This document shows, piece by piece, positions 1,519 through 34,489 of a stretch of 34,800 nt of DNA. Numbering within the stretch: the stretch's first letter is position 1; the number at the start of each line of letters is the position of its first letter. Both the position numbers and the translations under genes were made by a program. A model generated the notes under the pieces. The model was not told where the DNA came from. It ran no database searches and saw only the letters and a list, made by a program, of their open reading frames with translations. Source of the DNA: Octopus sinensis (Eukaryota); contig NW_021829943.1 of the NCBI RefSeq assembly GCF_006345805.1, positions 1-34,800 on the forward strand, written 5' to 3'.

Positions 1519-1670
1519 CCAAACACAGCATGATAAAAAGCTGTCCGACCCCTTGTGTCTCTCTTGTCCAAATCTGCTCCAGCATCTATTAACAAGTTTA
1601 TTAAAACTATGTTGCCCTCTGCAGAAGCAGCCATCAGATAAGTTTTACCGTTTGAATCTCTTAGGTTAAT
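1519..1670 (-). CDS. Internal exon of an ankyrin-repeat protein gene (gene B)
   Basis: Acceptor tttactttcttcacttcAG|ATT and donor TTTGG|GTAAGT. The 152-nt exon (phase 0 to phase 2) encodes INLRDSNGKTYLMAASAEGNIVLINLLIDAGADLDKRDTRGRTAFYHAVFG, about 1.5 ankyrin repeats. Confidence 0.9.
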
Positions 1671-2468: not shown

Positions 2469-2553
2469 TCTGTCTGAACGGCTTTCTATCATGCTTTTCG
2501 CACCTTCGATGTCCCCAGATTCAATTTTCTCCTTGATTTTTTAATGTCCATGT
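2469..2553 (-). CDS. Upstream coding exon of gene B, with an apparent 1-nt frameshift in an A-run
   Basis: Acceptor ttttattcaaaAG|AC and donor AGA|GTAAGT. The exon is 85 nt. Adding one A to the A6 run at 2537-2542 gives (D)MDIKKIKEKIESGDIEGAKSMIESRSDR, which splices in phase 0 to the ankyrin exon. Homologous to 31301-31380. Confidence 0.75.
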
Positions 2554-3570: not shown

Positions 3571-4057
3571 ACATACATACATAATATGTATGTATGTATT
3601 TGTGAATATATATTACATGGGTTTCAGTTCATTTCTACTGTATGACACCTTGGGCAAGTACCTTCTTTTATAATCCCATGGTTAATCAATGCTTCTGAGT
3701 GGATTAAGTAGACATAAGTAGAGAGAAGCCCTTCGTACACTGCTGCAAAATAAACTACGGACCAGTGCAAAAACTGCTGAAATGAACTCCTTGCAGATCG
3801 ATGTTTGACTATTTTTCATCACAGATTCTAAACTGGCAAACAACAAAAGAAAACACGAAAACCTAAAGAAATGTTTATCATTTAGTGCTGAAAATATGCA
3901 TTGTATGAAAACGAACAATATTTTGTCTGCTCAAAAATTTAAGGCCATGAAAAATAAAACAATTAAATCTTGTATAAACTATAAAAATTCTGGCATTTAT
4001 GTTCAAGCTTTCACTGTGTCAGCAATTGCTAGTTACGCCCTGTATTTCACACCAACA

Positions 4058-4339: not shown

Positions 4340-4740
4340 AGACACATAGGAACAGCCCTGCGCAGTGTTCAACTCACTGCTTACACCACACACCATTATG
4401 CACACACCCACACACACTCAATGCACTAACACACACACATGTGCACATACATGCTTGCACACCTTACTTCAAAAGGGTCACCGTTAATAACACTTTTTCA
4501 CTAAGCCCCTTTCTTCTGGTCATTTCATTATGTTGAACTGTTATTCGGTACACATTTTCTCTCCTTTTCTTTTCGTTCTTTCCCCATATTTTCCTCTCAA
4601 TCTATTCTCTCGAAGACTGTAGGCTTGAATCATCAAAGACTTTCCCATTTTTTTCCCAAGCACCAAACTAATTCACCTGCCTGTTGTGCCTTCACCTGTC
4701 TTCGTCTTTTGTTTTCTGTACATTGAAGTGTGTGTGTGTG
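4340..4740 (+). mobile_element. Interspersed non-coding repeat, possibly Penelope-associated; unfilled homolog of the foldback target site
   Basis: Aligns with the reverse complement of 22200-22322 joined to 24089-24680 (e.g. ttgtgccttcacctgtcttcgtcttttgtt; cagtgttcaactcactgc). Confidence 0.65.
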
Positions 4741-4761
4741 TGTGTTTGTCCTCACTTCATC

Positions 4762-4939
4762 ACTTGCCAATCACTGTTAGTGTGTTTACGTCCCCATAAC
4801 CTAGTGGTTCGGCAAAAGACCTGATAGAATAAGTACCAGACTTTCAAAGAATAAGTCCTGGGGTTGATTTCTTTTACTAAAAGGCGGTGCTCCAGCATGG
4901 CTTCAGTCGAATGGCTGAAACAAGTAAAAGAATAAAAGA

Positions 4940-4942
<3 letters not shown>
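4762..4942 (+). mobile_element. tRNA-SINE family A, 3' part
   Basis: gtgtttacgtcccc...ggttcggcaaaag...aaggcggtgctccagcatggc...gaaacaagtaaaaga matches the copies at 8244 and 17935. Confidence 0.8.
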
Positions 4943-5006
<64 letters not shown>

Positions 5007-5009
5007 CAA

Positions 5010-5080
5010 CGGGTTTCTTTCAGTTTCTATCTTCCAAATCCACTCACAAGGCTTTGGTCGGCCCGGGGCTATAGTAGAAC
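5010..5080 (-). mobile_element. tRNA-SINE family A, partial 5' body
   Basis: tttcagtttctatcttccaaatccactcacaaggctttggtcggcccggggctatag matches other copies. Confidence 0.7.
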
Positions 5081-5505: not shown

Positions 5506-5667
5506 ATTAACACACACACGGGTTCAGTTCCACCCCTTTATTATTAGTCAATATTAAATTCATGTTTTCAAAATATATTCTTTCCCAAGATTAACAAGTT
5601 TTCACATATTTCGTCGATGTACGAAATGTAAACAACGTCAATGCACGAACACACACATACCAGTATA

Positions 5668-6013
5668 TATTTGTTTATTACCCACAGGGGGCTAAACATA
5701 GAGGGGACAAACAAGGACAGAGAAACGGGTGAAAGGATGAAAGGCAAAGTCGACCTCGGCGGATTTGAATTCAGAATGTACCGGCAGACGAAATACCTAT
5801 TTCTTTATTACCCACAGAGGGGACAAACAAGGACAGACCAAGGGATTAAGTCGATTACATCGACCCCAGTGTGTAACTGGTACTTAATTAATCGAACCCG
5901 AAAAGATGAAAGGCAAAGTCGACCTCGGCGGAATTTGAACTCAGAACGTAACGGCGAACGAAATGCCGCTAAGCATTTCGCCCAGCGTGCTAACGTTTCT
6001 GTCAGCTCGCCGC
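5668..6013 (-). mobile_element. tRNA-SINE family B (with partial internal duplication)
   Basis: Reverse complement begins ggcggcgagctgacagaaacgttagc...gttctgagttcaaattccgccgaggtcgactttgcctttcatc (A/B-box-like head) and matches 11518-11750. Confidence 0.85.
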
Positions 6014-6532
6014 CTATATACACACACACACACACACAAGTATATGCACGCACATCCATAGGTGTACGTAAATATGTTTGCGTATCTATGAGTGTACACA
6101 CATAGACCCACATAAAGATAAATATAATTGAAAATTTGCTGGACCGATTTTTATGAAGTTTGGTAAATGAATGAAATAAGAAGACGTCATTGAATTTCGA
6201 AACAACAAAAATGAATTACATGTGACGGGATTTATTGTGGATTTTTTAGATATTTTACTTCAGAACATTCAGTGTGATGCGTAGAAGACAACATAATATT
6301 TTTCAATAATCTGAAGTCCGACGCTCCAGAAGTGGGAGGGCCATGGAAAGAGGCAGGACAGGCACCAATGCCAAAGAAATGCCGTGGTGACACGACAGTA
6401 ACGAGAAATAAAACTCCGGTTTCAAACGACGAGGCAAGTCCACCTGTTGTCACACGAAACACCAGAGGAGAAACGAGAGGGGTTGGAGTCTCAAGCCATT
6501 AGAAAAGATATACATACATAATACATAATACA

Positions 6533-6728
6533 GGTACTACTTAAGAAGAGTGGTCCCCGTGCGCGTACTTGCGCACTCGCGCATCCACGCTAGCTAGTCG
6601 TAACTAGTCGATCCTACAACGACTACCTAGCAAAGTAAATAAAACACAAAGTAAGGATCGACTAGTCACGACTAGCTAGCGCGGATGCGCGAGTGCACGC
6701 ACCGGGACCACTCTTCTTAAGTAGTACC
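6533..6728. mobile_element. Hairpin MITE (about 200 bp, long TIRs)
   Basis: GGTACTACTTAAGAAGAGTGGTCC...GGACCACTCTTCTTAAGTAGTACC with near-perfect inverted arms. Related copies at 15691 and 21569. Confidence 0.85.
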
Positions 6729-6796
6729 TACATACATACATACATTAATTGATAAATTAATTCTATCTTAACTTATAAGAGTCGAAAAATCTTTAC

Positions 6797-7425
6797 TTTA
6801 CCGCAAGGCAAAATATTTTCAGCAGTGGAAGTCTTTAATAATCCGTTCCCGTCTTTAATAATCCGTTCCAGTCTTTAATAATCCGTTCCAGTCTTTAATA
6901 ATCCGTTCCCGTCTTTAATAATCCGTTCCCGTCTTTAATAATCCGTTCCAGTCTTTAATAATCCGTTCCAGTCTTTAATAATCCGTTCCCGTCTTTAATA
7001 ATCCGTTCCCGTCTTTAATAATCCGTTCCAGTCTTTAATAATCCGTTCCAGTCTTTAATAATCCGTTCCCGTCTTTAATAATCCGTTCCAGTCTTTAATA
7101 ATCCGTTCCAGTCTTTAATAATCCGTTCCAGTCTTTAATAATCCGTTCCAGTCTTTAATAATCCGTTCCCGTCTTTAATAATCCGTTCCAGTCTTTAATA
7201 ATCCGTTCCCGTCTTTAATAATCCGTTCCCGTCTTTAATAATCCGTTCCAGTCTTTAATAATCCGTTCCAGTCTTTAATAATCCGTTCCAGTCTTTAATA
7301 ATCCGTTCCCGTCTTTAATAATCCGTTCCCGTCTTTAATAATCCGTTCCAGTCTTTAATAATCCGTTCCAGTCTTTAATAATCCGTTCCAGTCTGTTCTG
7401 GTTCGCGAGAATGAATAAATTGTAT
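6797..7425 (-). other. Putative 5' exon of gene B containing the minisatellite
   Basis: Donor TAAA|GTAAAGATTTTTC is homologous to CAAG|GTACAGATTTTTC at 17099. Both flanks align to the 17050-17600 block. Coding status is unclear. Confidence 0.45.
6831..7390. repeat. Minisatellite, 28 x 20 bp GTCTTTAATAATCCGTTCC(A/C)
   Basis: 28 contiguous units with only the last base variable (17 A, 11 C) and no spacers. Confidence 0.98.
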
Positions 7426-7830
7426 TCAATTACATAATTAAATATAGTGTAACTTTAGCAGGAGATACGTTATGGCAGTCATTGCTTTTTTTCTTCTTCT
7501 TTATCTGTTTATTCTTTGTATCTCCTTTCATTATTCTCTCTCTCAATATTCTGCCACTCCTTCATTTACGCGAATTTCTCATATGTGTTTATCGATTTTA
7601 AGCTGAATGGTGTTTGTACTATTTACCCGCTCAAAGTCTAATTCAGTTCATTTGGTGTGACCTAAATTTTTCATAGTTGTTTGAAAAACTATGAGAGAGA
7701 AAGAGAGAGGCCCACGTATGTCGATTAAACCCATTGAAATCTCTTTGTATCTTGTGAGTAATAAAAGCATTTCACCGTTTATTGTTAAATGTGTGTTGTC
7801 TGTTTTAATGGCCAACGCCAATGTAGTAAC

Positions 7831-7871
<41 letters not shown>

Positions 7872-8243: not shown

Positions 8244-8643
8244 TTTTACTCTTTTACTTGTTTCAGTCATTTGACTGCGGCCATGCTGGAGCACCGCCTT
8301 TAGTCGAGCAAATCGACCCCGGGACTTATTCTTTGTAAGCCCAGTACTTATTCTATCGGTCTCTTTTGCCGAACCGCTAAGTGACGGGGACGTAAACACA
8401 CCAGCATCTGTTGTCAAGCAATGCTAGGGGGACAAACACAGACACACAAACACATACGCACACATATATATAAATACATATATACGACAGGCTTCTTTCA
8501 GTTTCTGTCTACCAAATCCACTCAGAAGGCATTGGTCGGCCCGGGGCTATAGCAGTAGACAGTTGCCAAAGATGCCACGCAGTGGGACTGAACCCGGGAC
8601 CAAGTGGTTGGTTAGCAGGCTACTTACCAAACAGCCACTCCTA
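8244..8643 (-). mobile_element. tRNA-SINE family A, near full length
   Basis: Reverse-complement head aggagtggctgtttggtaagtagc...cccgggttcagtcccactgcgtggca (A and B boxes), internal TA/CA tract, tail ...gactgaaacaagtaaaagagta. Confidence 0.9.
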
Positions 8644-8644
8644 T

Positions 8645-8668
8645 AAATATATATATTAATATATATAT

Positions 8669-8715
<47 letters not shown>

Positions 8716-8717
8716 TA

Positions 8718-8771
<54 letters not shown>

Positions 8772-8788
8772 ATATATATAATATATAC
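8645..8788. repeat. (TA)n microsatellite
   Basis: Direct sequence. Confidence 0.95.
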
Positions 8789-9375
8789 ATCCTCTTCCAG
8801 GTCAGGCATCATCTCATTTCTTCCTGAATGAGAGAAAGGGGCCAACGGAAAGATAAAGTTGGAGAAAAGGAAGCATCAACCCCAGAACTGGATCTTGAAA
8901 CCCTGAAACGAAGGAAGAAGATGTTGATGGGATTTGAACTGAGAAATCAGAGAGTTGGAAGGATTAGCACAAGGTAACTTATCGAACATTCTAAGGCTCT
9001 GCATATCCCCCACACACACACGTATTTGTCTGTCTGTCTGTCGGTATTAACTTGCTATACATTAATCTTTCATAAATATTTTCTGTCGTTAATTAGTTTG
9101 AAATTATATCATTAAATTCCCATTAATTTGGGGTTTGTATTTTGTTGACAAAGTTAGTGTGAATTAGGTCAAAAGGCTTCATGTTGTTATTGCTGTCGGT
9201 GGCGCCGGTGCACACTGTTTCAATTTCTATGTGCCGCTATGTGTGACTGTGCATGCGTGTATATAATACTTTAGGAGTGTGTGTGCGCATGTGCTTGTGG
9301 GTGATGTACGACTGTCTTTGTGCGTATACGTATATATACATATAAACACATATATACATGTCCATACATATATGG

Positions 9376-9502: not shown

Positions 9503-9506
<4 letters not shown>

Positions 9507-9632
9507 TCCACTCTCAAGGCTTTGGTTGGTCCGAGGCTTTAGTAGAAGACTCTTACCCAAGGTGCCACGCAGTGGGACTGAACCCAGAACCATGTGGTTG
9601 GTAAGCAGGCTACTTACCATACGGCCACTACG
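9503..9632 (-). mobile_element. tRNA-SINE family A, head fragment
   Basis: cccaaggtgccacgcagtgggactgaacccagaaccatgtggttggtaagcaggctacttacc. Confidence 0.85.
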
Positions 9633-10944
9633 TATGTACATATGTATATATGTTTATGTATATTTGTATACCTGTGTATGTATCAATTTGCTTGTGTGTA
9701 TGGATGTATATATATGTATATGTGCGTGTATCTATGTGCACGTATGTATTAATGTACATATGTATTTAATGTAACGTATGTATCCTAGTGGTTCTCTCAG
9801 CATTTCGTTGATCGCAGATAACATGTTGGGCGATCATTCGGTACTAGTAACATAACTGTCACTTGGGTTTATTTACATTTCTGAAGAAAAAGGATACCCT
9901 TCCCCCACCCCTAACCCTAACCCCACATATATAAAAAAATAAAAATTTTACGGAATGTGACGGTCTTCTTCAAATGTAAACAATTACACGTGATATAAAT
10001 GGGACTCATATCGAAAGAATGCCACATGTTGTCAGTAGTCTTTTTCCTCAACCCTTGTTGGGTTTGTTCTTTCATGCAGTGCTTTACGTATGTAAAATGT
10101 GAAGTTCTGCTGAAACATCGATGCAAGCTGTGATTTTAGAATCTGAGTTTCCTCACATTTTTGTTTGTGAAATCATAAGTGGTTGCCACATGTCCATGTA
10201 ATGCTGGCAGTTTGTTACTGTTATTGTTGTGTTGTCTTGGTCTTCTTTCTTGCCTTTCACAGTTTCCTCGTGGAAAAAGCTTGCTGTGTTGTTAACCAAG
10301 TATTATCATTTGTGCATTTTGGCTGAGTGATTTTCTTTTCAAGGGTGAAACATTTCTTTTCAACAAACGTAACTTGCTGGCATGATTGTGTTTTTTCTGT
10401 CAAACTTGAGAATGTTAAGCATTTCTTATTCCAATATTTTAAATTAGTCTCTTTGTGTAACCTATCGAAAGATCTTCTCTGGCCTGTCTATAGAATTGGT
10501 GTAAGTCTTGGGTCAGGTCGAAAGTCCTCTCCTTTGCCTCCTCTCGTTGACTCAAATAAGCCCTGGAGATGTGGCTGTTATTTCTAGCAGGTTAAAATGT
10601 TTGGGAATGCTGTTGATGACACAACAATGAAAGTGTGTTAATGTGTTACTATTGCTTAATTCTGTTAGGAAGGGAGCAGGGGAAAACTGAAATTAAAAGA
10701 AAAATCAGAATCGTAATTTAATCTTGCTGCAGAAAATATAAGAATTTGAGAAAGAATTTCTTGGAAAATTACTTTGGATTTGAGGATGATATTGTCTCTA
10801 AAAATAAGGAATGGACACATTTGTTATCCTCAGTGGCAGAAGGGAAGATGAAAATAGTTAAATAAATAGATTACTTATTATTAGTATTGTAGTAATTATT
10901 AGTATTGTAGATTGCTTATTATTCGGATATTAGTATTGTAGTAT

Positions 10945-11310
10945 CTACGAGGTGGCGATCTGTCAGAAGGGTTAGAACGTCAGACTAAACGCTTAGCGGC
11001 ACTTTGTCCGTCTATACGTTCTGAGTTCAAATTCGCTGAGGGTCAATAAATTAAGTACCAGTTTGCACTGGTGTCGATGTAATCGACTTCATCCGTTTGT
11101 CTGTCCTTGTTTGTCCCCTCTGTGTATAGCCTCTTGTGGGTAGTAAAGAAATAGGTATTTCGTCTGCTGCTACTTTCTGAGTTTAAACTCCACCGAGGTC
11201 AACTTTGCCTTTCATCCTTCCGGGGTTGATAAATTAAGTACCTGTTGCGTACTGAAGTCGATCTAATCGATTGGCCCCACTCCCCCAAAATTTCGGGACT
11301 TGCACCTAGA
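10945..11310 (+). mobile_element. tRNA-SINE family B
   Basis: aggtggcgatctgtcagaa...gttctgagttcaaattc...aattaagtaccag...tttgtcccctctgtg. Confidence 0.8.
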
Positions 11311-11517
11311 CTAGAAAAGATTATCAGTAGTGTAGTGATTGAATTCAAATAATGCCGAAGTCAACTTAGTCTTTGATTCTTTCAGGGTCAATAAAGTAGG
11401 TACCAGTGTGTACTGGGGCGGAGGTAATCGTCTTACCCCCTCCCACGAACTTTCTGGCCCTGTGCAAAAGATTGAAAGCATTATAATGATAATTCTGTTA
11501 ATAATATTATCACTCAA

Positions 11518-11750
11518 GGGCGGCGAGCTGGCAGAATCGTTAGCACGCCAGGCCAAACACTTAGCGGTATGTCGTCTGACGTTACGTTCTGAGTTCAAAT
11601 ACCGCCGATGTCACCTTTGCCTTTCATCCTTTCGGGGTCGATAAATTAAGTACCAGTTACGCACTGGGGTCGATGTAATCGACTTAATACCTTGACCTGT
11701 CTTTGTTTGTCCCCTCTATGTTTAGCCCTTTGTAGGCAGTAAAGAAATAA
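11518..11750 (+). mobile_element. tRNA-SINE family B
   Basis: ggcggcgagctggcagaatcgttagc...gttctgagttcaaat...cctttcggggtcgataaattaagtaccag. Confidence 0.85.
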
Positions 11751-15690: not shown

Positions 15691-15895
15691 GGGTACTACT
15701 TGAGAACAGTGGTCCCGGTGCGCGCACTCGCATTAGCTAGTCATGACTAGTCGATCTTTTCTTTGTGTTTTTGAGTTTTATTTACTTTGCTTTAAAAAAT
15801 TATTTATTTTGTGTCCGTGCTAGCTAGTCGTGACTAGTCGATCCTACAACGGCTTCCTAGAAAAGTAAATAAAACACAAAATAAATAATTTTTTG
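15691..15895. mobile_element. Partial or rearranged copy of the hairpin MITE
   Basis: gggtactacttgagaacagtggtcccggtgcgcgcac...ctagctagtcgtgactagtcgatcctacaac. Confidence 0.75.
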
Positions 15896-15918: not shown

Positions 15919-16408
15919 TTTTTTGTAGCAGTGTCATATGAAATTGTCACCCATAATTATGACCCTAGTATCAATCTGTTGCATTTCAATCTGTTTTAGG
16001 GTTAAGGGTGGGTGGAAGGATAACTTTTTTGTTCAGAAATGTAAATAAATAGGCGCAGGAGTGGCTGTGTGGTAAGTAGCTTGCTTACCAACCACATGGT
16101 TCCGGGTTCAGTCCCACTGCGTGGCACCTTGGGCAAGTGTCTTCTACTATTGAGAAAATTCTATATGTTGTAAGATATTTCGACTTCAATTTCAAGCATT
16201 TCAGCAATTTTAACATTCCGTGCTGTATGAATACGTCCCTCGTTTAAGAAACAGATTGGGTTTATTTACATTTGTGAAGAAAAAAAGATACCCTTCCCTA
16301 ACCCTAACCATAACTCTAAACCTAACCCTAAAATAGATTGAAATGCAATAGATCGATACTAGGGTCATAACCATGGGTGACAATTTCATTTGACACCGCT
16401 ACAAAAAA
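15919..16408. mobile_element. TIR element (MITE-like) with TTAGGG-like repeats in its arms
   Basis: 15919-16049 is inverted relative to 16261-16408 (tttttgtagc.gtgtca.atgaaattgtcaccca...atgaccctagtatc.atct.ttgcatttcaatct.ttttagggtt). A partial arm also lies at about 9865-9925. Confidence 0.8.
16051..16150 (+). mobile_element. tRNA-SINE family A head nested in the TIR element
   Basis: aggcgcaggagTGGCTGTGTGGtaag...ccgGGTTCAGTCCCactgcgtggcaccttgggcaagtgtcttctactat. Confidence 0.9.
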
Positions 16409-16424: not shown

Positions 16425-16895
16425 GAGGGAGATAGATAGACAGAGAGGGAGATAGAAAGAGAGAGAGGGAGATAAATAGATAGAGAGAGAGAGATGGAGA
16501 TAGATAGCTAGAGAGAGAGAGAGGAGATAGATAGATGGAGAGAGAGGAGATAAATAGATAGAGAGAGAGGAGATAAATAGATAGAGAGAGAGAGAGGGAG
16601 ATAGATAGCTAGAGAGAGAGGAGATAGATAGATAGATAGAGAGAGAGAGGAGATAAATAGATAGAGAGAGATAGGGAGATAGATAGATAGAGAGGGAGAT
16701 AGATAGAGAAAGAGAAAGACAGATAGAAAGATAACGAGGTAGATAGAGAGAGAGAGAGAGAGAGAGAAAGATAGAGAGAACGATAGAGAGAGAAATAGTA
16801 TGTAAATAGAGAGAGAGAGAGAGACAGAGAGAGAGGCAGATATATGAATAGATAGAGACAGATATAGATAGGTAGGCAGAGAGGCAGGCAGAGAG
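16425..16895. repeat. (GA)n/(TAGA)n compound microsatellite
   Basis: Direct sequence. Confidence 0.95.
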
Positions 16896-17098
16896 ACATT
16901 TAAAAGCATGGATGTCAGTGTATATACAACTGAATCTATGTTCGTGATTTCATCAATTTGTCTGTTTATGTCTGGGTAACGAATCTCTATGTTGTATTGT
17001 AACATAACAATAATATATAAACATGCATCTATCCACCTATCCATACACAGATACGTAAACTCTATCTTATGACAATATAAGACAAGAAAAATCTGTAC

Positions 17099-17190
17099 CT
17101 TGCAGAAAGACAGAATATTTCCAGGTGTAGGACTCCCAAAAGCCATTTCATTCTGGCTCTGGGTCGCGCGGATGAATAAATTGTATTCAG
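17099..17190 (-). other. Putative 5' exon of gene A (paralog of 6797-7425)
   Basis: cagaATGaaATGgcttttgggagtcctacacctggaaatattctgtctttctgcaag|GTACAG. Possible frames are MKWLLGVLHLEIFCLSA and MAFGSPTPGNILSFCK; the exon may be non-coding. Confidence 0.45.
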
Positions 17191-17705
17191 TTCTTAAGAA
17201 TATATTTAATGTTAAGCAGGAGGTCATTCAGGGCAGCCAATAAAGCGACTCATTGTATTTTTTCTTTGTTGGTTGCCTTTCATTCTTATCTCTCAATATC
17301 CTGTCACTCCTTCACTCACAGGAATTTCTGAAATTACAGCTGTGACCTAGTTTTACCCTAATTGTCCAAAGAGCTATGTGTATATGTATGTGTGTGTAGA
17401 GAGACAGAGAGAGAGAGGGAGAGAGAGAGAGAGAGAGAGAGGAAGAGAGAACGGGTGGGCAACACCTACGTATGTTGATTGTATATTATTAACCCATTGA
17501 AATCGTTTTAGATTTCGTGAGCAATAAAAGCCGAACACATTTTGTTGTTAAAGGCGCGTTGCGGTTTTATTGGCCAACGTCTATGCATTGTAGTAACATG
17601 ATCATACACACACACAGACACACACAGACAACACAATTCACACACAGACATACTTATGTATTATGTATATATAGATACTTGTGTGTGTGTGTGTATTATA
17701 CATGC

Positions 17706-17888
17706 ATGGCAGAAACGTTAGCAGTCCGGGCGAAATGCGTAGCCGTATTTCGTCTGTCGTTACGTTGTGAGTTCAAATTCCGCCGAGGTCGACTTTGCCT
17801 TTCAGCCTTTTGGGGTCGGTAAATAAAGTACCAGTTACGCACTGGTGTCTGTCCCCTCTATGTTTGGCCCTTTGTGGGCAATAAAGTA
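17706..17888 (+). mobile_element. tRNA-SINE family B
   Basis: tggcagaaacgttagc...gttgtgagttcaaattccgccgaggtcgactttgcctt. Confidence 0.8.
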
Positions 17889-17934
17889 ATATATATGTAT
17901 ATGTATATACTCTCTTTCTCTTTTACTCTCTTTA

Positions 17935-18290
17935 CACCGCCTTTAGTCGAGCAAATCGACCCCGGGACTTATTCTTTGTAAGCCCAGTACTTATTCTATC
18001 GGTCCCTTTTGCCGAACCGCTAAGTGACGGGGACGTAAACACACCAGCAACGGTTGTCAAGCAATGCTAGGGGAACAAACACAGACACACAAACACACAC
18101 ACACACACATATATATATATGCATATATACGACAGGCTTCTTTCAGTTTCCGTCTACCAAATCCACTCACAAGGCATTGGTCGGCCCAGGGCTATAGCAG
18201 AAGACACTTGCCCAAGGTGCCACGCAGTGGGACTGAACCAGGAACCATGTGGTTGGTTAGCAAGCTACTTACCATACAGCCACTCCTGCG
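17935..18290 (-). mobile_element. tRNA-SINE family A, near full length
   Basis: Closely matches 8244-8643. Confidence 0.9.
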
Positions 18291-18292
18291 CT

Positions 18293-18333
<41 letters not shown>

Positions 18334-18365
18334 ATATATATATTATATATATATATATATATATA

Positions 18366-18421
<56 letters not shown>

Positions 18422-18463
18422 TATATAATATACGTCATATACTGCATAACGTCATATACTGCA

Positions 18464-21568: not shown

Positions 21569-21772
21569 GGGTACCATTTAATTAAGAAGAGTGGTCCTGG
21601 TGCGCGCACTCGCGTACTCGCGCATCCGCGCTAGCTAGTCGTGACTAGTCGATCCTACGACTACCTAGCAAAGTAAATGAAACGCAAAACACAAAGTAAA
21701 GATCGACTAGCTAGCTCGGATGCGCTAGTACGCGATTGCGCGCACCGGGACCACTCTTCTTAGGTAGTACCC
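21569..21772. mobile_element. Hairpin MITE copy
   Basis: gggtac...aagaagagtggtcctggtgcgcgc...gcgcgcaccgggaccactcttcttaggtagtaccc. Confidence 0.85.
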
Positions 21773-22092: not shown

Positions 22093-22322
22093 GTAGTGTA
22101 CACAATGTATTCATAAAACATCTTTCGTAATGCTTATGTATTAAGATCTTAGTTAAAGATTACTAGTAGATACTCTTCACAAGTAAAAGTTCTACATTCC
22201 AACCTTAAGTAAACACACGCACAGACACACACACATAAATTTACAGTAAACAAAAGACGAAGACAGGTGAGGGCACAACAAGAAGGTGTATTCCCTTGAC
22301 GCTCGGGAAAAATTGGGAAGTC

Positions 22323-24088
22323 GGTTAATATAGGGCGTAACAAATATCAGAAAATCAAAAAAAAAATGTGTGTGTAATAGGTGTAAAACAAATTCCTATG
22401 AACGAATATGAAAAAAAAATTCGCGCACGCGAAAGGGAGTGGGGGAGAGGCCTCGGAAAATTCACATCGGGAAGTTCCGAAAGCGTCTGAGGAGCTGACC
22501 CGGGCACCAAAACAAAAAAAAAATAGTGTAATATGTGTAAAACAACTTGCTCTAAACGAATAAGACAAAAAAAAATGCGCTCTCGCGAAAGAGGGGTGGG
22601 GGAGAGGCCTCGGAATATTTATATCGGGAATTTCCGAAAGCGTCTGAACCGGGCACACAACACAAAACAGCGTAATAGGTGTAAAACAACTTGCTCTAAA
22701 CGACTATCATGAAAAAAATGCGCGCTCTCGAAAGGGGGTGGGGGAGAGGCTTCGGAAATTTCACATCTTCAGTCCACGGCCTTTAACTAAGAAAAAATAG
22801 TGTAATTGGTGTAAAACTACTTGTTCTAAACGAGTATCAAGAACACACACTCACACATGAATCATAAACTCCGTATTTCGCAAAAAAAAAATAAAGAGAA
22901 GAAATTCTGGAAAAGTGAAGAAATGTTGGATCTCCGCCATGTGAATCAAAATACGTGTCAGAAACATCTTGAAATACTACAGAAATTATGTTACGAAAAT
23001 GATAATGTATACATACCTCTTTGAGTGGTCCATCGATAATGATGATAAAGAAATGAGTTGGATTTGAACTCAGAATATTGACTAACACAACTACATACTA
23101 CAAGACTCAAAATATTCAGCCAAGTCACCACCCTTTAACTAGCAATAATAATAACATCAATAACATAACAGCCAAAGATTTATTTGTTCTGAAAATAACA
23201 ATCATAGTAAATAAATATGTTCTTTAATATTCACATTCATGTGCACAGTTAACACACTTACATATAAACAGTCACGCATGCATAATACAGAACGGAACAC
23301 ATAAATGAAGGATGCATTACTTAGTATATATTACATCTAGAGAATTTTGATTAATAAGTCAAATATGCAAATTATAAAGATAATTAATTGCTTTACTAAA
23401 CAGTGTTGTAAAGGTGAAAGAATAATTTGGGAAAAAAATACACGCCAAAACTAATTAATAAAGGATAATTAGGGAAGGATTGACACAAAATAATAATTTT
23501 TTCTGTCTCTTTTTTTCTGATAAATGCATCTTAATAAGTGAAAAGAATTGCATATATCTGAACTATTTCAAAGAAAAGCATAAATTTAATGTTTAAAATA
23601 GCTTTAACCAAGGAATGAGATCCAACATTTCTTCACTTTTTCCAGAATTTCTTCTCTTTATTTTTTTTTTTTTTGCGAAATACGGAGTTTATGATTCATG
23701 TGTGAGTGTGTGTTCTTGATACACGTTTAGAACAAGTAGTTTTACACCAATTACACTATTTTTTTCTTAGTTTAAAGGCCGTGGACTGAAGATGTGAAAT
23801 TTCCGAAGCCTCTCCCCCACCCCCTTTCGCGAGCGCGCATTTTTTCATGATAGTCGTTTAGAGCAAGTTGTTTTACACCTATTACGCTGTTTTTGTTTCT
23901 GTTTTTGTGCCCGGGTCAGCTCCTCAGACGCTTTCGGAACTTCCCGATGTGAATTTTCCGAGGCCTCTCCCCCACCCCCTTTCGCGTGCGCGAATTTTTT
24001 TTTCATATTCGTTCATAGGAAGTTGTTTTACACCTATTACACACATTTTTTTTTGATTTTCTGATATTTGTTACGCCCTATATTAACC
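22323..24088. mobile_element. Foldback-like non-autonomous DNA transposon with modular long TIRs and an 8-bp TSD
   Basis: TIRs at 22323-~22935 and ~23618-24088 begin GGTTAATATAGGGCG. A perfect GGGAAGTC duplication lies at 22315-22322 and 24089-24096. The centre is AT-rich and non-coding. Confidence 0.9.
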
Positions 24089-24689
24089 GGGAAGTCTTTG
24101 ATGTTTAGAACCTACGCTCTTCGACAGAAAGGATTGAGGGGGGAAATGGAGAGGGAACGAAAATAAAGGAGGAGAGAGAAAATGTGTAGGATTAACGGTT
24201 GAACATGATGAAATCCTGGAAGAACGAGTTTGAGATAAAGGGGGCAAATAACGCTGCCCCTGCTGAACTAGGTTGCGTAAGGGCGACTGTGCATTTAAGA
24301 AGGATGTGTGGGTGTGCATGTGTAAAAGGGGACGAGTGCGTGTGAATGTTGTGTAGGGGAGCTTAAATTATGTGGGTCTGCGTGTACGTAAGGGAGCGCA
24401 TGTGTGTGTATATGTAGAAGTATCCTAATGTGGGCATTGTGTAGAATGGTGTTTCGTGTATTTGTATGTGTGTGAAGCTGCATATAGCATGTGCTTGTGT
24501 GTGTGTATGCAAACGTTTGTGTGTAGCAGTTAATGTGTGTTTGTTTGAATGGTGTGTGCACATGTATATACACATTAGTGCATGTGTGTGGGAGTCGTTG
24601 TGTGCATGATGGTGTGTGGTTTGGGCAGTGAGCTGAACAGTGTGCAGGGGTGTTCTGATTGTGGTGTGGTGGTGATGTTACTGGTGAGT

Positions 24690-25365: not shown

Positions 25366-28300
25366 CTCACAGGCAAGGAACACAGGTACAAGATTTTTGG
25401 GCAGGGAACACTGACGGGGTCGGGGGCGTGGGTATACTTCTTGCGGAGAAATGGGTAGATAAGGTAATCGAGGTAGTCAGAGTAAGTGACAGAGTAATTA
25501 AAATTAGATTAGTCATTCACCATAGTTCAGCTACCATCATCTCGGCATATGCCCCTCAACCAGGGCTACCGGAAGGACAAAAAGACCAATTCTATGACAC
25601 CCTATTGCGGACTACCTCGTTGACATATGACAGTGACCTTCTCTTCGTGGCAGGGGATTTTAATGGACATGTTGGTCGGTATGTCGGGGGCTTCCATGGC
25701 GTTCATGGAGGCTACGGTTTTGGCTCTCGTAATGAGGAGGGAACCAGGCTGCTGGAGTTCTGCGATGCAAATGACCTTATGGTCTGCAATACCAACTTCA
25801 GGAAACCCACCTCTCACCTAGTCACCTACCGTTCTGGCAGACACACTAGCCAGATTAACTACATCCTTGCCAGAAAAAGGGAAAGAGGGCTGCTTACAAA
25901 TGCCAAAACCTTTCCAGGCGAAGAATGTACTCCTCAACATAGATTAGTAGTTAGCGACTTCAGGATCAGAGCTAAATGGTTGCCCAGAAGAAGACCAGCT
26001 TGGAGGAGAAGGGTCTGGAAGCTTAAAGATCCTGCAAATGGACAGAGATTTAGAGACATATTACTCGAAGCCTTTGACAAAATAGAAGGGGATATAGCTT
26101 CATTTAATGTGGAAGACAACTGGAGATTTCTACGGGACAATCTGCTGACAGCCACTGACCAGATCTGTGGATGGAGCAAAGTACCAGCTCGACCCAGAGT
26201 AACATGGTGGTGGAACACTGTGGTTGACAGGGCTATTAGACAAAAGAGACAGGCTTGGAAGGACTGGAAGAACGGTGGTAGCAGGGAATTGTATCAGACA
26301 GCCAGAAGGGAAGCTAGGAGACAGGTTTATTTAGCCAGAGGGGAAGCGGATAAGAAAAAATTTGCCAATGTTCTGAGCCGTGAGGATAAAAGACTTGAGG
26401 TATTTCATGTTGCAAGACAGTGTGTGAGAGAGAATCGTGATGTGGTAGGAGAGAAGTGTGTTCGCACGGATGATGGTTCACTTGCGCTAAATGAGGATGC
26501 AAAGAGAGAGGTTTGGAGATGCCACTATGAAAGGTTGCTGAATAAAGAAAATGAATGGGATAAAGAGAGTCTGCCGAATGTCAACCCAACAGAGGGACCA
26601 GCCATCCGAGTTGAAAATTCTTTGGTAGTTAAAGCAATTAGAAGCATGAAGACAGGGAAAGCCCCAGGCCCATCAGGAATTACTGCAGAGATGCTCAAAA
26701 TATCTGGCAGTGTCGGCTATAACCTAGTCACCCGTATAGTCAACCAGGTGATACACGAAGGAGTCATACCGAATGACTGGTGTGGCAGCATACTAGTCAA
26801 CTGCTACAAAGGTAAAGGTGATGCCCTAGATACAAATAATTACAGAGGTATCAAGCTGTTGGATCAGGTGATGAAGGTTACGGAGAGGGTCATAGCCCAA
26901 CTAATTAGAGAGAGAGTTAGTTTAGATGAGATGCAGTTTGGGTTCGTGCCAGGGAAAAGTACCTCTGATGCTATATTCCTGGTAAGGCAGCTGCAGGAGA
27001 AATACTTAGCCAAAGATAAGCCCCTGTACCTGGCTTTCGTTGACATGGAGAAAGCCTTTGATAGGGTCCCCCGATCCCTTATCTGGTGGTCAATGAGGAA
27101 ACTAGGGATAGATGAATGGCTGGTGAGGGCTGTGCAAGCCATGTACAGAGATGCCGTAAGTAAGGTTAGGGTTGGCAACATGTACACAGAAGAATTCAAA
27201 GTAGAGGTTGGGGTCCACCAGGGTTCAGTGCTCAACCCCCTCCTATTTATCATAGTCCTCCAGGCAATTACGGAGGAATTCAAGACAGGTTGCCCCTGGG
27301 AGCTCCTCTATGCTGACGACCTTGCTCTAATTGCTGAGTCACTATCAGAACTGGAGGAGAAGTTCCAGGTGTGGAAGGAGGGCCTAGAATCGAGGGGCCT
27401 TAGAGTCAATCTAGCTAAAACCAAAGTCGTAATAAGTTGGAAGGTAGACAATCCACAAATGTCTTCAGGAAGATGGCCCTGTTCAATCTGTAGAAAAGGT
27501 GTGGGTAGAAACTCTATAAGATGTACCCAGTGTAAGCTATGGACACATAAGAGGTGCAGCAATGTCAAAGGTAGGCTAACTGGGAAGATAGTTTTTGTAT
27601 GTGGCAGATGCTCGGGAGCATTAACCTCCGAAAATCTGCAGAAAACAACTTCCGTCACTTTCCAGGGGAAAAAAACTATAAGTTGTTGATAGCTTCCGTT
27701 ATCTAGGTGACCAAGTCAGTTGTGGGGGTGGGTGCGCTGAAAGTGTAACTGCTAGAATAAGAATAGCCTGGGCAAAGTTTAGGGAGCTCTTACCTCTGCT
27801 GGTGACTAAAGGCCTCTCGCTCAGAGTAAAAGGCAGACTGTATGATGCAGGTGTACGAACAGCCATGCTACATGGCAGTGAAAAATGGGCCGTGACTGCT
27901 GAGGACATGCGTAAGCTTGTGAGGAATGAAGCCAGTATGCTCCGATGGATGTGTAATGTCAGTGTACATACTCGACAGAGCGTTAGTACCTTGAGAAGCA
28001 TTAGTTGTACCTAAGAAGCATCAGTTGTGGTGTGCAAGAGAGATGATTGCGCTGGTATGGTCATGTGGCGAGAATGGATGAAGATAGGTGTGTGAGAAAG
28101 TGCCAATCCCTAGCAGTTGAGGGAACCCGTGGAAGAGGTAGACCCAGGAAAACCTGGGACGAGGTGGTGAAGCACGACTTTTGAACTTTAGGCCTCTCTG
28201 AGGAAATGACCAGCGACCGAGACCTTTGGAAATATGCTGTACGTGAGAAGACCAGGCAGGTCAAGTGAGCCCAGCCCACTTATGCATGCCTTTCCTCCCT

Positions 28301-28770
28301 TGGACACAAAGACCTGTTGAGGCAAGCGAAGTCGATATAGAACCTCATCCGACGACAGGCACCCATGCCAACCCCCTTTGCTTGCGAAGACATGTTGGGG
28401 CAAGCGAAATCGAAATAGAAATCGAATTGAACCAGCCAGGATCCCTGGTCTGGTGGTACGTAAAAAGCACTATCCGACTCGTGGCCGATGCCAGCGCCGC
28501 CTCGACTGGCCTCCGTGCCGGTGGCACGTAAAATACACCAATCCGACCGTGGCCGTTGCCAGCCTCGCCTGGCACCTGTGCAGGTGGCACGTAAAAAGCA
28601 CCCACTACACTCATGGAGTGGTTGGTGTTAGGAAGGGCCTCCAGCTGTAGAAACATTGCCAGATAACACTGGAGTCTGGTGCAGCCTTCTGGCTTCCCAG
28701 ATCCCCGGTCGAACTGTCCAACACATGCTAGCATGGAGAACGGACGTTAAACGATGATGATGATGATGAT
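25366..28770 (+). mobile_element. 5'-truncated RTE-clade LINE (APE endonuclease, RT, PHD-like finger, 3' UTR with subrepeats, (GAT)n tail); defective
   Basis: ORF 25428-27689 has SAYAPQ, GDFNGHVG, KAPGPSG, YRGIKLL, QFGF, FVDMEKAFD, GVHQGSVL and LLYADD. There is a frameshift plus TAA near 27670-27681, with further lesions near 28000 and 28180. The tail is ggacgttaaac(gat)n. Confidence 0.95.
25428..27689 (+). pseudogene. RTE ORF2 (endonuclease-reverse transcriptase), interrupted before the C-terminus
   Basis: 753-aa ORF with the motifs above; it continues in another frame as VDSFRYLGDQV...RELLPLLVTKG...LHGSEKW. Confidence 0.9.
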
Positions 28771-28799
28771 CACACACACACACACATATATATATATAT

Positions 28800-29840
28800 C
28801 ATCATCATCATCATCATCATTTAGCGTCCGTTTTCCATGCTAGCATGGGTTGGACGGTTCAACTGGGGTCTGGGGAGCCCGATGGCTGCACCAGGCCAGT
28901 CAGATCTGGCAGTGTTTCTACAGCTGGATGCCCTTCCTAACGCCAACCACTCCGAGAGTGTAGTGGGTGATTTTATGTGCCACCGACACAGGTGCCAGAC
29001 GAGGCTGGCGAACGGCCACGCTCGGATGGTGTTTTTATGTGCCACCGACACAGGTGCCAGACGAGGCTGGCAGACGGCCACGCTCGGATGGTGTTTTTAT
29101 GTGCCACTGACACAGGTGCCAGATGAGGCTGGCGGACGGCCACGATCGGATGGTGTTTGTTACGTCCCCAAAGCACGGAGGCCAGTCTATGCGGTACTGG
29201 CTACAGCCACGTTCGGATGATTTTCTTGTGTGCCACCGGCACTGGTACCACAAAGATACAAATTCCATTGATGTTCATCTATTTTGATTTGATTTGATTT
29301 GATTTGATTTGATTTGATTTGATTTTCACTTGCCTCAACAGGTCTTCACAAGTGTCACAGGAAGGAAGGAAGGTATGCACAGGTGGACTGGTACCACAAA
29401 GATACAAATTCCATTGATGTTCATCTATTTTGATTTGATTTGATTTGATTTGATTTGATTTTCACTTGCCTCAACAGGTCTTCACAAGTGTCACAGGAAG
29501 GAAGGAAGGTATGCACAGGTGGACTGACTACGTCCCAAGTAGGGGCCACGGGTTATGGCCTGACTAGTCTTGCCGGGTCTTCGGTTGGTGTTTTTATGTG
29601 CCACCGACACAGGTGCCAGATGAGGCTGGCGAACGGCCACGATCGGATGGTGTTTGTTATGTGCCCACGTCACAGAGGCCAGTCGATGCGGTACTGGCTA
29701 CGGCCACATTCGGATGGTTTTCTTGTGTGCCAACGGTACTGGTACCACAAAGATACAAATTCCATTGATGTTCATCTATTTTGATTTGGTTTGATTTGAT
29801 TTGATTTGATTTGATTTGATTTTCACTTGCCTCAACAGGT
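28800..29840 (-). mobile_element. Opposite-orientation RTE 3' ends with tandem internal duplications and (TTTGA)n tracts
   Basis: (ATC)n tail followed by the reverse complement of the RTE 3' UTR. Roughly 62-bp units gtgccaccgacacaggtgccaga... are repeated. Block 29245-29390 is duplicated at 29391-29526. Confidence 0.85.
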
Positions 29841-30594
29841 CTATATAATCATGTAGTCAAATGATCAAATACACTGTCAGATGTTACACATCACTTGTCA
29901 CAATGTGCTTTGCATCGTTTTACGTTTTGAATGATGCCACTCCACTGGTTAGGAAAGGAGGCGAACATTCGGATGTCTTGGGAAAGGAAGGGCATTGCAA
30001 GAATCAAACCCACGATCTAGCTATTGTGAGGGTAACACCCGAATCACTATGCCATACAGCTACTCACACATGCACATGAGTATACACATACATAGACTTA
30101 TATATGTACGTTTATGCATATAAAGCAATCATTTTACACCTTTTCTCCATACTACCATGGGTTGTATGAGTATATTATCAATCCATTCTTTTTGCATATG
30201 GATCCCCTTCATTTTATTAACCCTTACCTGTTGTTCAAGGGATCCCTTATTCCAATGGTTTGTCTATTAACAGGGAAAATGATAATCTAATCGTTCATAG
30301 CTGAGCAATTTTCAGTAAAAGCAAATGGAAACATACAAACACACACACATACACACAAACACACACATATATATGTATGCACACATACACACACACATAT
30401 ATGTATGCACACGTACACACACACACACACAAGCACTTCATTTTGGCAGTTTATTTCACTGGTCCTCAGATTTTGTCCAGCAGTGTACGATGTGCTTCTC
30501 ACAGATTATCTCTATTTAATCCACTCAGAAGTCTTGATTAGTCATGGGATTTAGAAGAAGGTACTTGCCCAAGGTGTCATACAGTGGGTCAAAA

Positions 30595-30755: not shown

Positions 30756-31300
30756 AGTATATATATATATACGTATACACATAATGGAAATTTATTAAAT
30801 AATTATGAAGTAGTCATAAAGATATTTGCAAAAGTTTATTAAGTAAGCGCTTGTTGATAGTGTCTGTCGAAATATTAGCAAAGTAGATGAGATCAAATCA
30901 AAGATCAATACAGGACGTTTTATTGAACAAACTCCGTTTCATTGATTCTTTTACTAGTTTTCATAAATTTGCTTTTCTTTAGAGAATCAATTTGTTTTTT
31001 TATATAAAGTGTCCCCCACCCTAGCTGGAGTATGATCCACAGATTTATAGCTCAAGATGTAAGCAGAGGAATGTAGCTAACCTAAAGACACAACTCAATG
31101 ACTGTTGTTAGGCTTATTAGTGTCAAGAAGAACATTCAGCTATGAATAATACTTTAGATAAACTGAAGTTTACAATATCAATGTTATCTTATGCAAGATT
31201 TTAGAACCATCAACTTCTGTTTATTGTTGTTTAACTTATTTTATAAGTTTTTTTAAAACTGTTTTGTTTTCTTTCTTTTTCGACTGATTTTATTCAAAAG

Positions 31301-31380
31301 ACATAGCGAATATCAGACAGAAAATTTCGGAGGATGACATTGAAGGGTTTAAAAAATTAATAAGAAAGGATCCAACAATA
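31301..31380 (+). CDS. Coding exon of an inverted paralog (gene C) of the ankyrin gene
   Basis: tttattcaaaAG|AC...ATA|GTAAGT. The 80-nt exon (phase 1 to phase 0) is open and encodes (D)IANIRQKISEDDIEGFKKLIRKDPTI. The flanks 30785-31520 align to the reverse complement of 2335-3090. Confidence 0.8.
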
Positions 31381-31559
31381 GTAAGTTGTTCTGTTTATTG
31401 CCTTCTCAAATTTGATTGTTTATTATTTTATACACAATATGAAATGTTTTATACACAATATGAAAAGTAGCCACATATATTGTTCCATGATATTTCATTT
31501 CTTTCTTCACCTCTTTTCTCTAATCCTCATCATCGACATTTTTCCCTGTCATCTGTAGT

Positions 31560-34440: not shown

Positions 34441-34489
34441 GCGTTTCTACATATTCACTGAAACCACGGGTCTCCCATAAATATGAAAG

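What the first reader, a model, noticed from the sequence alone, without database searches (positions are those of the whole stretch)
6831..7390. 28-copy binary minisatellite amplified from a paralog's putative start-codon region
Seen: 28 units of 20 bp vary at one position only (order C,A,A,C,C,A,A,C,C,A,A,C,A,A,A,A,C,A,C,C,A,A,A,C,C,A,A,A). The minus-strand unit context cagactggaACGgatt aligns with the single-copy cagaATGaaATGgctt in the paralogous block (about 17136-17153). Homology continues on both sides and through the splice donor. The array contains no ATG on the minus strand. Inference: part of a 5' exon was amplified by about 540 nt while losing both candidate ATGs. This could give a length-polymorphic 5' leader or switch gene B to a downstream start (ATG at 2551).
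Basis: partly seen in the sequence, partly recalled or inferred. Interest (0 to 1): 0.7.

Follow-up and report, generated by a model that had tools for sequence, protein, structure and literature searches.

The report
Young non-coding 20-bp VNTR upstream of ankyrin gene
A real, very young 28-copy 20-bp tandem repeat grew from one short non-coding stretch upstream of an ankyrin-repeat gene in an unidentified animal-like genome; it is an ordinary minisatellite, and the idea that it destroyed a start codon is not supported.

Summary
Positions 6831-7390 are 28 head-to-tail copies of GTCTTTAATAATCCGTTCC[C/A]. The other 19 positions never vary, and the A/C order is exactly as reported.

With 27 units removed, the flanks align collinearly with a second copy at 17039-17602 (64% identity). 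One unit falls on that copy's cagaATGaaATGg. The array therefore grew from a single-copy 20-mer, which is bracketed by a 5-bp direct repeat (AGTCT). It is at least about 40 times younger than the duplication.

It cannot code: there are stops in all six frames and no ATG.

The start-codon reading is not supported:
- A and B differ by a 2-nt indel between A's ATGs and the donor.
- Spliced in silico, both of A's ATGs run into stops in exon 2 of B and of C.
- Copy A has no ankyrin exons downstream.
- In paralog C, the codon homologous to ATG 2551 is in frame with the ankyrin frame, so the family's start most likely lies in exon 2.
- In B as assembled, ATG 2551 is one base out of frame and stops after 20 codons.

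Whether the block is a promoter plus a non-coding first exon cannot be tested here, because there are no transcripts and the species is absent from every searchable collection. This is an ordinary two-state VNTR of low interest.

The parts
6831..7390 (.). Minisatellite: 28 x 20 bp, GTCTTTAATAATCCGTTCC[C/A] on the + strand, which reads [G/T]GGAACGGATTATTAAAGAC on the - strand
   Evidence: Stops in all six frames, no ATG. No special RNA structure, z = -0.93.
6830..6834 (.). Left copy of the 5-bp direct repeat AGTCT that brackets the ancestral 20-mer
   Evidence: That this microhomology seeded the first duplication is inferred.
7390..7394 (.). Right copy of AGTCT, the partial 29th unit. It ends in A, which is the ancestral state of the variable site.
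   Evidence: Copy A also has A at the aligned position.
6797..6830 (-). Single-copy tail between the array and the candidate GT donor. The GT at 6796-6795 is homologous to A's donor; a second GT lies at 6801-6800.
   Evidence: Use as a donor is not shown.
7409..7446 (-). Candidate core promoter on the minus strand. It holds the perfectly conserved 18-mer TGAATACAATTTATTCAT (7428-7411), an Inr-like TCATTC (7414-7409) and a TATA-like TATATTTAA (7446-7438). Read on the + strand, the same 18-mer contains AATAAA.
   Evidence: The promoter role is inferred from sequence only.
6740..7835 (.). Copy B of the old duplicated non-coding block, with the array inside it
17039..17602 (.). Copy A of the duplicated block: 64% identity to B over aligned columns, with patchy conservation
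17131..17150 (-). Single-copy counterpart of the repeat unit in copy A (TGAAATGGCTTTTGGGAGTC). ATG#1 is at 17151-17149 and ATG#2 at 17146-17144. The candidate exon ends at 17099, with GT at 17098-17097.
2469..2553 (-). Gene B exon 2: acceptor ...ttcaaaag|AC, ATG 2551-2549, TAA 2543-2541, run of six A at 2542-2537, TGA 2491-2489, ankyrin N-cap frame KIKEKIESGDIEGAKSMIESRSDR, donor |gtaagt
1519..1670 (-). Gene B exon 3: ankyrin repeat INLRDSNGKTYLMAASAEGNIVLINLLIDAGADLDKRDTRGRTAFYHAVF, acceptor cttcag|, donor GG|gtaagt. The gene continues past the left edge of the window.
   Evidence: Pfam Ank_2, Ank_4 and Ank above their cut-offs.
31301..31380 (+). Paralog C, exon-2-like fragment (..IANIRQKISEDDIEGFKKLIRKDPTI|gtaagt). 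It has ATA where B has ATG. It lies within 73%-identical homology 30852-31516 ~ 3019-2345.

Best explanation
This is a recent, non-coding minisatellite (VNTR).

Origin. A single-copy 20-nt stretch was bracketed by a 5-bp direct repeat, AGTCT...15 nt...AGTCT. It was duplicated once by slipped-strand mispairing and then expanded to 28 copies by replication slippage and unequal exchange. One A-to-C change arose in a unit and was spread by the same copying, which gives the two-state code.

Setting. The array sits inside an old, roughly 0.6 kb (possibly up to 2 kb) duplicated non-coding block. This block lies 4.2 kb upstream of, and in the same orientation as, the first coding exon of an ankyrin-repeat gene.

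Consequence. It has no start-codon role and encodes nothing. Most likely it is selectively neutral, length-polymorphic DNA. If the block is that gene's promoter plus a non-coding first exon (about one chance in three), the only effect is a leader 540 nt longer, with no AUG and no notable structure.

Shown: the array, its origin from one unit, its youth, and its non-coding nature. Inferred: the slippage mechanism, neutrality, and polymorphism.
For: - Array and binary code.
- One unit fits collinearly into the A/B alignment. The spacing from the 18-mer to the donor is 74 nt in B and 73 nt in A.
- AGTCT is present at both array edges. The ancestral state A is shared with copy A and with the partial last unit.
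- There are no substitutions at 532 non-variable unit positions, against a Jukes-Cantor distance of 0.49 between A and B. This bounds the array's age at no more than about 2% of the per-lineage divergence.
- Stops occur in all six frames, the longest open stretch is 19 codons, and there is no ATG.
- The folding energy of the putative leader is no different from shuffles, z = -0.93.
- No frame is conserved between A and B, because of a 2-nt indel.
- A's ATGs hit stops in exon 2 of B and of C.
- Two-state interspersed minisatellites are a described class (PMC2363947).
Against: - Conservation between A and B is patchy rather than uniform. It reaches 90% around an 18/18 identical motif about 75 nt upstream of a homologous GT donor, and 87% at a second island.
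- TATA-like and Inr-like motifs sit at plausible spacing (read).
- Exon 2 of gene B starts 2 nt before its ATG, behind a strong acceptor that is conserved in C. This implies that some upstream non-coding exon exists.
- These points fit a promoter and first exon, so the array could be transcribed and not neutral.
- No population data show polymorphism.
Confidence: 0.55

Rival explanations
1. 5'-leader VNTR, the reader's model without the start-codon part. The A/B block is a duplicated TATA/Inr-type promoter plus a short non-coding first exon: about 75 nt in A (17173-17099) and about 616 nt in B (7412-6797). Exon 1 of B splices to exon 2 at 2553, and A may serve as a distal alternative first exon of the same gene. 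The array then lengthens the 5' UTR by 540 nt and removes two upstream AUGs, which could change translation or transcript stability in an allele-length-dependent way.
For: - Same strand as gene B and 4.2 kb upstream of it.
- Homologous GT donors.
- The strongest conservation peak, 18/18 plus CGCGA, lies about 75 nt upstream of the donor.
- TATA-like motifs lie 31-34 nt upstream of TCAT[T/C]C (sequence).
- Exon 2's acceptor sits 2 nt before the ATG and is conserved in C.
- The array has no AUG and no strong structure, so a scanning ribosome could cross it.
- A has no downstream exons of its own, which is compatible with an alternative first exon.
- Gene-proximal VNTRs are known to affect expression (PMC8024321, PMC10234305).
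Against: - There is no transcript evidence of any kind.
- An 18-nt perfect run in about 540 aligned columns at 64% identity has roughly an 8% chance expectation (my estimate).
- TATA-, Inr- and GT-like strings are common in 35-40% GC DNA.
- The same 18-mer reads as AATAAA on the other strand.
- Gene B's own N-terminus is not intact as assembled, so the gene may be dead.
Confidence: 0.3
2. Internal satellite of an old interspersed repeat. The two roughly 0.6-kb blocks are decayed copies of a transposable element or other dispersed repeat, and one copy happened to expand a 20-mer. There is no relation to the ankyrin gene.
For: - The window is packed with repeat families.
- The securely old homologous part is only about 560 bp at 64% identity, which is the size and divergence typical of old TE copies.
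- The adjacent 92%-identical piece (8292-8791 ~ 17935-18436) belongs to a multi-copy family that is also present at 3615-3737, 4728-5079, 9503-9773, 16034-16150 and 30430-30588.
Against: - Only two copies exist in 34.8 kb, and a profile search found no further fragment.
- No terminal repeats, ORF or poly(A)-type end was recognised.
- Conservation is patchy rather than uniform.
- The unit is absent elsewhere in the window.
- Genome-wide copy number could not be tested.
Confidence: 0.12
3. Assembly artefact: the copy number or the A/C order is a product of mis-assembly of a shorter array.
For: The units are perfectly identical. The 560-bp array is longer than short reads. Another possible consensus error lies in the same window, a one-base frame offset beside an A6 run at 2537-2542.
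Against: The irregular, non-periodic A/C order is not what collapse or artificial extension of a repeat usually gives. The flanks are unique and collinear with the paralog.
Confidence: 0.03

Closest known systems
Two-state minisatellites read by minisatellite variant repeat (MVR) mapping, such as human D1S8/MS32 and D7S21
   Same: A tandem array of units tens of bp long. Two unit types differing at one base are interspersed, which gives a binary code along the allele (PMC2363947 abstract).
   Different: From my own knowledge, the human loci are GC-rich, lie near recombination hot spots and are proven hypervariable. This array is about 38% G+C, has a 20-bp unit and comes from an unknown species. 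Its polymorphism is untested.
Gene-proximal regulatory VNTRs: SLC6A4 5-HTTLPR (20-23-bp units upstream of the TSS), MAOA uVNTR, the CSTB promoter dodecamer, the INS VNTR
   Same: A minisatellite placed in or next to a putative promoter or leader of a gene, with a similar unit length. VNTR length and motif composition can affect the expression of nearby genes (PMC8024321, PMC10234305; CSTB is mentioned in PMC2674676).
   Different: There is no evidence here that the region is a promoter or is transcribed, nor for any expression effect. The named human examples are recalled from general knowledge and were not tested here.
Tandem arrays inside transposable elements, such as the SVA VNTR region or satellites in MITEs and Helitrons
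   Same: An array that expanded inside one copy of a sequence present more than once.
   Different: Only two copies of the host block were seen and no TE hallmark was found.
Duplicated alternative first exons and promoters
   Same: Two diverged copies of a promoter-like block with a homologous GT donor lie on the same strand upstream of one coding exon 2. Copy A has no exons of its own.
   Different: Use of either donor has not been shown.

Membership tests
Minisatellite / VNTR | Head-to-tail copies of a 10-100 bp unit, with many copies | tested here: met
   28.2 copies, period 20, no indels
Minisatellite / VNTR | Copy number varies among individuals | not testable with these tools
   No second individual or read data. 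The species is absent from the collections.
Two-state (MVR-type) minisatellite | Two unit variants that differ by a base substitution and are interspersed along the array | tested here: met
   One variable position, 17 A and 11 C, 14 runs
Higher-order-repeat satellite | Multi-unit periodicity of variants beyond chance | tested here: not met
   (CAAC)x3 and (CCAAA)x2 stretches exist, but 28% of permutations give an equally long periodic stretch
Transcribed 5'-UTR / first-exon VNTR | A TSS upstream of the array and transcripts that cross it | not testable with these tools
   No transcript resource. Only TATA- and Inr-like strings and a conservation peak were seen.
Transcribed 5'-UTR / first-exon VNTR | A donor downstream of the array that is spliced to the coding exon | not testable with these tools
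   GT is present at homologous positions in A and B. Its usage is unknown.
   Both of A's ATGs reach stops in exon 2 of B and of C. There is a 2-nt indel between A and B. C's ATA, homologous to ATG 2551, is in the ankyrin frame.
   tblastn with B's exon 2 and exon 3 peptides finds nothing between 9800 and 17099
Dispersed repeat / TE-internal satellite | The host block or the unit is found in many unrelated contexts | tested here: inconclusive
   Two copies only in the window. Metagenome scans gave 0 hits but hold almost no eukaryotic DNA. The source genome is not searchable.
Ankyrin-repeat protein gene (gene B) | ANK repeat domains | tested here: met
   Ank_2 34.9 bits, Ank_4 34.7 bits and Ank 26.6 bits, all above their cut-offs
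Ankyrin-repeat protein gene (gene B) | An intact ORF from a start codon | tested here: not met
   As assembled, ATG 2551 is one base out of the ANK frame, and that frame is closed by TAA 2543-2541. The gene is also cut by the window edge.

The most novel reading that the evidence does not exclude
The array is functional. One version: it makes a length-polymorphic, AUG-free 5' leader for one of two duplicated alternative first exons of an ankyrin gene, having replaced two upstream AUGs. This would give allele-length-dependent translational control. Another version: the 28 copies of TAATCC/GGATTA, the core site of K50 paired-like homeodomain proteins such as Otx, Pitx and Bicoid, act as a binding-site cluster next to the promoter. 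They are spaced 20 bp apart, about two helical turns. There are 28 such sites in the array against 13 in the remaining 34 kb.
Probability: 0.1. Interest if true: 0.5.

Novelty: new member of a known kind. Interest (0 to 1): 0.22.

Why it matters
If the array lies in a transcribed leader, it would be a natural allelic series for testing how 5'-UTR length and loss of upstream AUGs affect expression. It would also be a convenient binary-coded marker for population typing in this species. As things stand, it is a clean example of a minisatellite being born: the single-copy progenitor state is preserved in a paralogous copy, and the microhomology that probably seeded the first duplication is still visible. 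That makes it a useful illustration, but it is not a new kind of element.

Tried and rejected
- Protein search with the ankyrin exon 3 peptide found no candidate at all. No gene model could be recovered.
- An exact look-up of the LINE ORF found nothing on record. Its best homologue is only 54% identical. The species is not in the protein collection and the organism stays unidentified.
- Rfam at gathering thresholds and tRNA scans of the whole window found nothing.
- Two metagenome scans, one for the unit junction and one for the conserved 18-mer plus CGCGA, gave 0 hits. This says little, because those collections hold little eukaryotic DNA.
- Higher-order repeat structure of the A/C code is not beyond chance, P = 0.28. 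I dropped it as evidence for block-wise duplication.
- RNA structure of the putative 619-nt leader is not different from shuffles.
- A profile search for further copies of the A/B block in the window returned only low-complexity (GA)n noise.
The tblastn test answered the relevant question.
- In one search I started C's exon one base too early, at the G of the acceptor AG. This made ATG#2 look in frame with C. One search corrects this: neither ATG is in frame.
- I rejected CpG deamination as the source of the variant. C/A is a transversion.

Full report
**1. The observation**

The window is eukaryotic in character. It is 29-52% G+C, dense in microsatellites, carries a LINE-type endonuclease-RT ORF, and has spliced ankyrin exons.

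At 6830-7394, Tandem Repeats Finder reports a period-20 array of 28.2 copies with no indels. No other position varies. The unit is absent from the rest of the window even with three mismatches.

**2. Where the array came from**

A self-comparison shows collinear homology between a block B and a block A:

| Block B | Block A | Identity |
|---|---|---|
| 6740-6854 | 17039-17154 | 68% |
| 7380-7835 | 17140-17602 | 62% (64% for the first two blocks aligned together, one unit kept) |
| 8292-8791 | 17935-18436 | 92% |

With a single unit kept, B aligns to A without a large gap on both sides. The distance from a perfectly conserved 18-mer (7411-7428 and 17172-17189) to the GT donor is 74 nt in B, after subtracting 27 units, and 73 nt in A. 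The array is therefore an amplification of one 20-nt segment.

The unit matches its counterpart at only 12 of 20 positions, and this is the least conserved stretch of the proximal alignment. The homology is therefore positional.

The array is bracketed by AGTCT at 6830-6834 and 7390-7394. The ancestral sequence thus read AGTCT, then 15 nt, then AGTCT. This is the arrangement in which slipped-strand mispairing creates a first 20-bp duplication. The slippage step is inferred. Copy A lacks this direct repeat.

The variable site is A in copy A and in the partial last unit, so A is ancestral and C derived.

**3. Age**

There are no substitutions at 28 x 19 = 532 non-variable positions. This bounds per-unit divergence at no more than 0.0056 (95% bound). 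The Jukes-Cantor distance between A and B is 0.49, or 0.25 per lineage. The array, or its last homogenisation, is therefore at least about 40 times younger than the duplication.

The A/C order contains (CAAC)x3 and (CCAAA)x2 stretches. However, 28% of random permutations contain an equally long periodic stretch. I do not claim block-wise, higher-order duplication.

**4. Coding and RNA properties**

Each unit carries a TAA on either strand. All six frames are closed and the longest open stretch is 19 codons. There is no ATG on either strand.

Folded as RNA, the putative minus-strand leader (7415-6797) is no more stable than shuffled sequence, z = -0.93. If transcribed, the array is an AUG-free, unstructured spacer.

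**5. The neighbouring gene**

On the minus strand, 4.2 kb downstream of the array, two exons encode an ankyrin repeat.

- Exon 2 (2553-2469) has the acceptor ttattcaaaag|AC and the donor AGA|gtaagt.
- Exon 3 (1670-1519) has the acceptor cttcag| and the donor GG|gtaagt.
- Together they read KIKEKIESGDIEGAKSMIESRSDR + INLRDSNGKTYLMAAS...AFYHAVF. This matches Pfam Ank_2, Ank_4 and Ank above their cut-offs.
- The gene runs off the left edge of the window.

A third, inverted fragment C (30852-31516, 73% identical to 3019-2345) carries an exon-2-like segment, IANIRQKISEDDIEGFKKLIRKDPTI|gtaagt, with the same acceptor.

**6. Testing the start-codon interpretation**

(a) Between A's ATGs and the donor, A and B differ by a 2-nt indel, so no frame is conserved.

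(b) I joined exons in silico.
- A's ATG#1 (phase 2) reads ...SARHGH and then hits TAA 2543-2541 in B's exon 2.
- ATG#2 (phase 0) stops 10 codons into B's exon 2.
- In C's exon, ATG#2 stops after 1 codon and ATG#1 after 11.
- One search's apparent in-frame join of ATG#2 to C came from starting C's exon one base early. One search corrects this.

(c) tblastn finds no ankyrin-type exon between 9800 and 17099. A is thus a copy of the upstream block only, not a demonstrated paralogous gene.

(d) ATG 2551-2549 lies 2 nt behind the conserved acceptor, with a purine at -3 and a G at +4. In C the homologous codon is ATA, and it is in frame with C's ankyrin frame. The simplest reading is that the family's start codon has always been in exon 2, and that any exon 1 is a non-coding leader. 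On that reading the array did not force a switch of start codon. A's ATGs are at most upstream AUGs.

(e) In B as assembled, ATG 2551 is one base out of the ankyrin frame. Its ORF is 20 codons and ends at TGA 2491-2489. The offset lies beside a run of six A at 2542-2537. This is either a consensus error at a homopolymer or a real frameshift, in which case gene B may be a pseudogene. C also lacks a start codon and an exon 3.

**7. Is the block a promoter with a first exon?**

For:
- The orientation and distance fit.
- Exon 2 begins behind a strong acceptor just before its ATG, which implies that some upstream non-coding exon exists.
- The GT donors in A and B are homologous.
- Conservation is patchy. 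It peaks at 90% around the 18-mer about 75 nt upstream of the donor, and at 87% at TCTCTCAATATYCTGYCACTCCTTCA.
- TATA-like strings lie 31-34 nt upstream of an Inr-like TCAT[T/C]C (7446-7409 and 17208-17170, read).

Against:
- There are no transcript data.
- By my estimate, an 18-nt perfect run has about an 8% chance expectation at this identity and length.
- Such motifs are common in AT-rich DNA.
- On the plus strand the same 18-mer contains AATAAA.

I put this reading at about 0.3. If it is true, A could be a distal alternative first exon of the same gene.

**8. The transposable-element alternative**

The securely old homology is only about 560 bp. The adjacent 92%-identical piece belongs to a multi-copy family seen at five other places in the window. 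However, a profile built from A and B finds no further copy in the window, and no TE hallmark was seen. Genome-wide copy number cannot be tested here. I put this reading at about 0.12.

**9. External data**

Everything I tried came back empty or uninformative.
- A protein search with the ankyrin exon found nothing.
- An exact look-up of the LINE ORF found nothing.
- The best LINE homologue is 54% identical.
- Two metagenome scans gave no hits.
- Rfam and tRNA scans found nothing.

The organism is not represented and remains unidentified.

**10. Comparison with known things**

Arrays with two interspersed unit types that differ at one base are the classic substrate of minisatellite variant repeat mapping (PMC2363947). 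VNTRs in regulatory regions, and their effects on nearby genes, are well documented (PMC2674676, PMC8024321, PMC10234305).

This locus meets the structural definition of a two-state minisatellite. Membership in the class of transcribed or regulatory VNTRs cannot be tested here. The defining features of an "amplified start-codon region" were tested and not met.

**11. Verdict**

This is a real, clean and very young minisatellite whose single-copy progenitor state is preserved in a paralogous block. It is an ordinary kind of element. The start-codon story is not supported, and the 5'-leader story remains open.

- Interest: about 0.2.
- Novelty: new member of a known kind.

Noticed in passing
window 2537-2551 (minus strand): The only ATG at the head of the ankyrin gene's first coding exon is one base out of frame with the ankyrin frame. 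The offset sits beside a run of six A, and TAA 2543-2541 closes the ankyrin frame. This is either a homopolymer consensus error or a frameshifted pseudogene.
   Followed up: partly
window 30852-31516 (+): An inverted, 73%-identical copy of exon 2 of the ankyrin gene and its flanking intron. It has ATA in place of the ATG and no exon 3 nearby, so it is probably a pseudogene fragment.
   Followed up: partly
window 8292-8791 and 17935-18436: This sub-block of the A/B duplication is 92% identical, while the rest is about 64%. It belongs to a multi-copy repeat family (also at 3615-3737, 4728-5079, 9503-9773, 16034-16150 and 30430-30588) and ends in (TA)n. Possible causes are gene conversion or independent insertions of a young element. 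Unexplained.
   Followed up: partly
window 25428-27689 (+): A 753-aa ORF of a non-LTR retrotransposon, with an endonuclease remnant, RVT_1 and a C-terminal PHD-like finger. It is N-terminally shorter than its roughly 1050-aa relatives. The best database identity is only 54%.
   Followed up: partly
window 17099-17151 (minus): Copy A's ATG#1 opens MKWLLGVLHLEIFCLSA up to the donor. This hydrophobic stretch superficially resembles a signal peptide. No downstream exon was found for it.
   Followed up: no
window 6533-6728: A palindromic (foldback, MITE-like) element lies directly downstream of the candidate donor. Other copies are at 15692-15884 and 21579-21771.
   Followed up: no
window 22322-22934 and 23617-24089: A large inverted repeat (85-90% identical arms of about 450-600 bp) built from a 157-bp tandem repeat (22374-22767).
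   Followed up: no
window 28345-29842: A complex repeat: a 62-bp tandem repeat (28966-29158, 3.1 copies), direct and inverted copies of it, and three (TTTGA)n arrays (29283-29325, 29429-29461, 29780-29822).
   Followed up: no
window 16296-16331: Six copies of CCCTAA, an interstitial vertebrate/mollusc-type telomere repeat. It lies next to a 400-bp (GAGA/GATA)n tract at 16425-16835.
   Followed up: no
window 33116-34441: A purine-only (GA/AAG-type) low-complexity tract of about 1.3 kb on the + strand, with GC skew 0.75 and AT skew 0.84.
   Followed up: no
window 5655-6083, 10950-11750, 17642-17904: A SINE-like repeat family with several copies. One copy is inserted in copy A between the old block and the 92% block.
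   Followed up: no
window 6831-7390: Every unit contains TAATCC/GGATTA, the K50 homeodomain core site, at 20-bp spacing: 28 sites in the array against 13 in the rest of the window. On the minus strand, the positions homologous to A's two ATGs read CTG or CGG, and ACG.
   Followed up: partly
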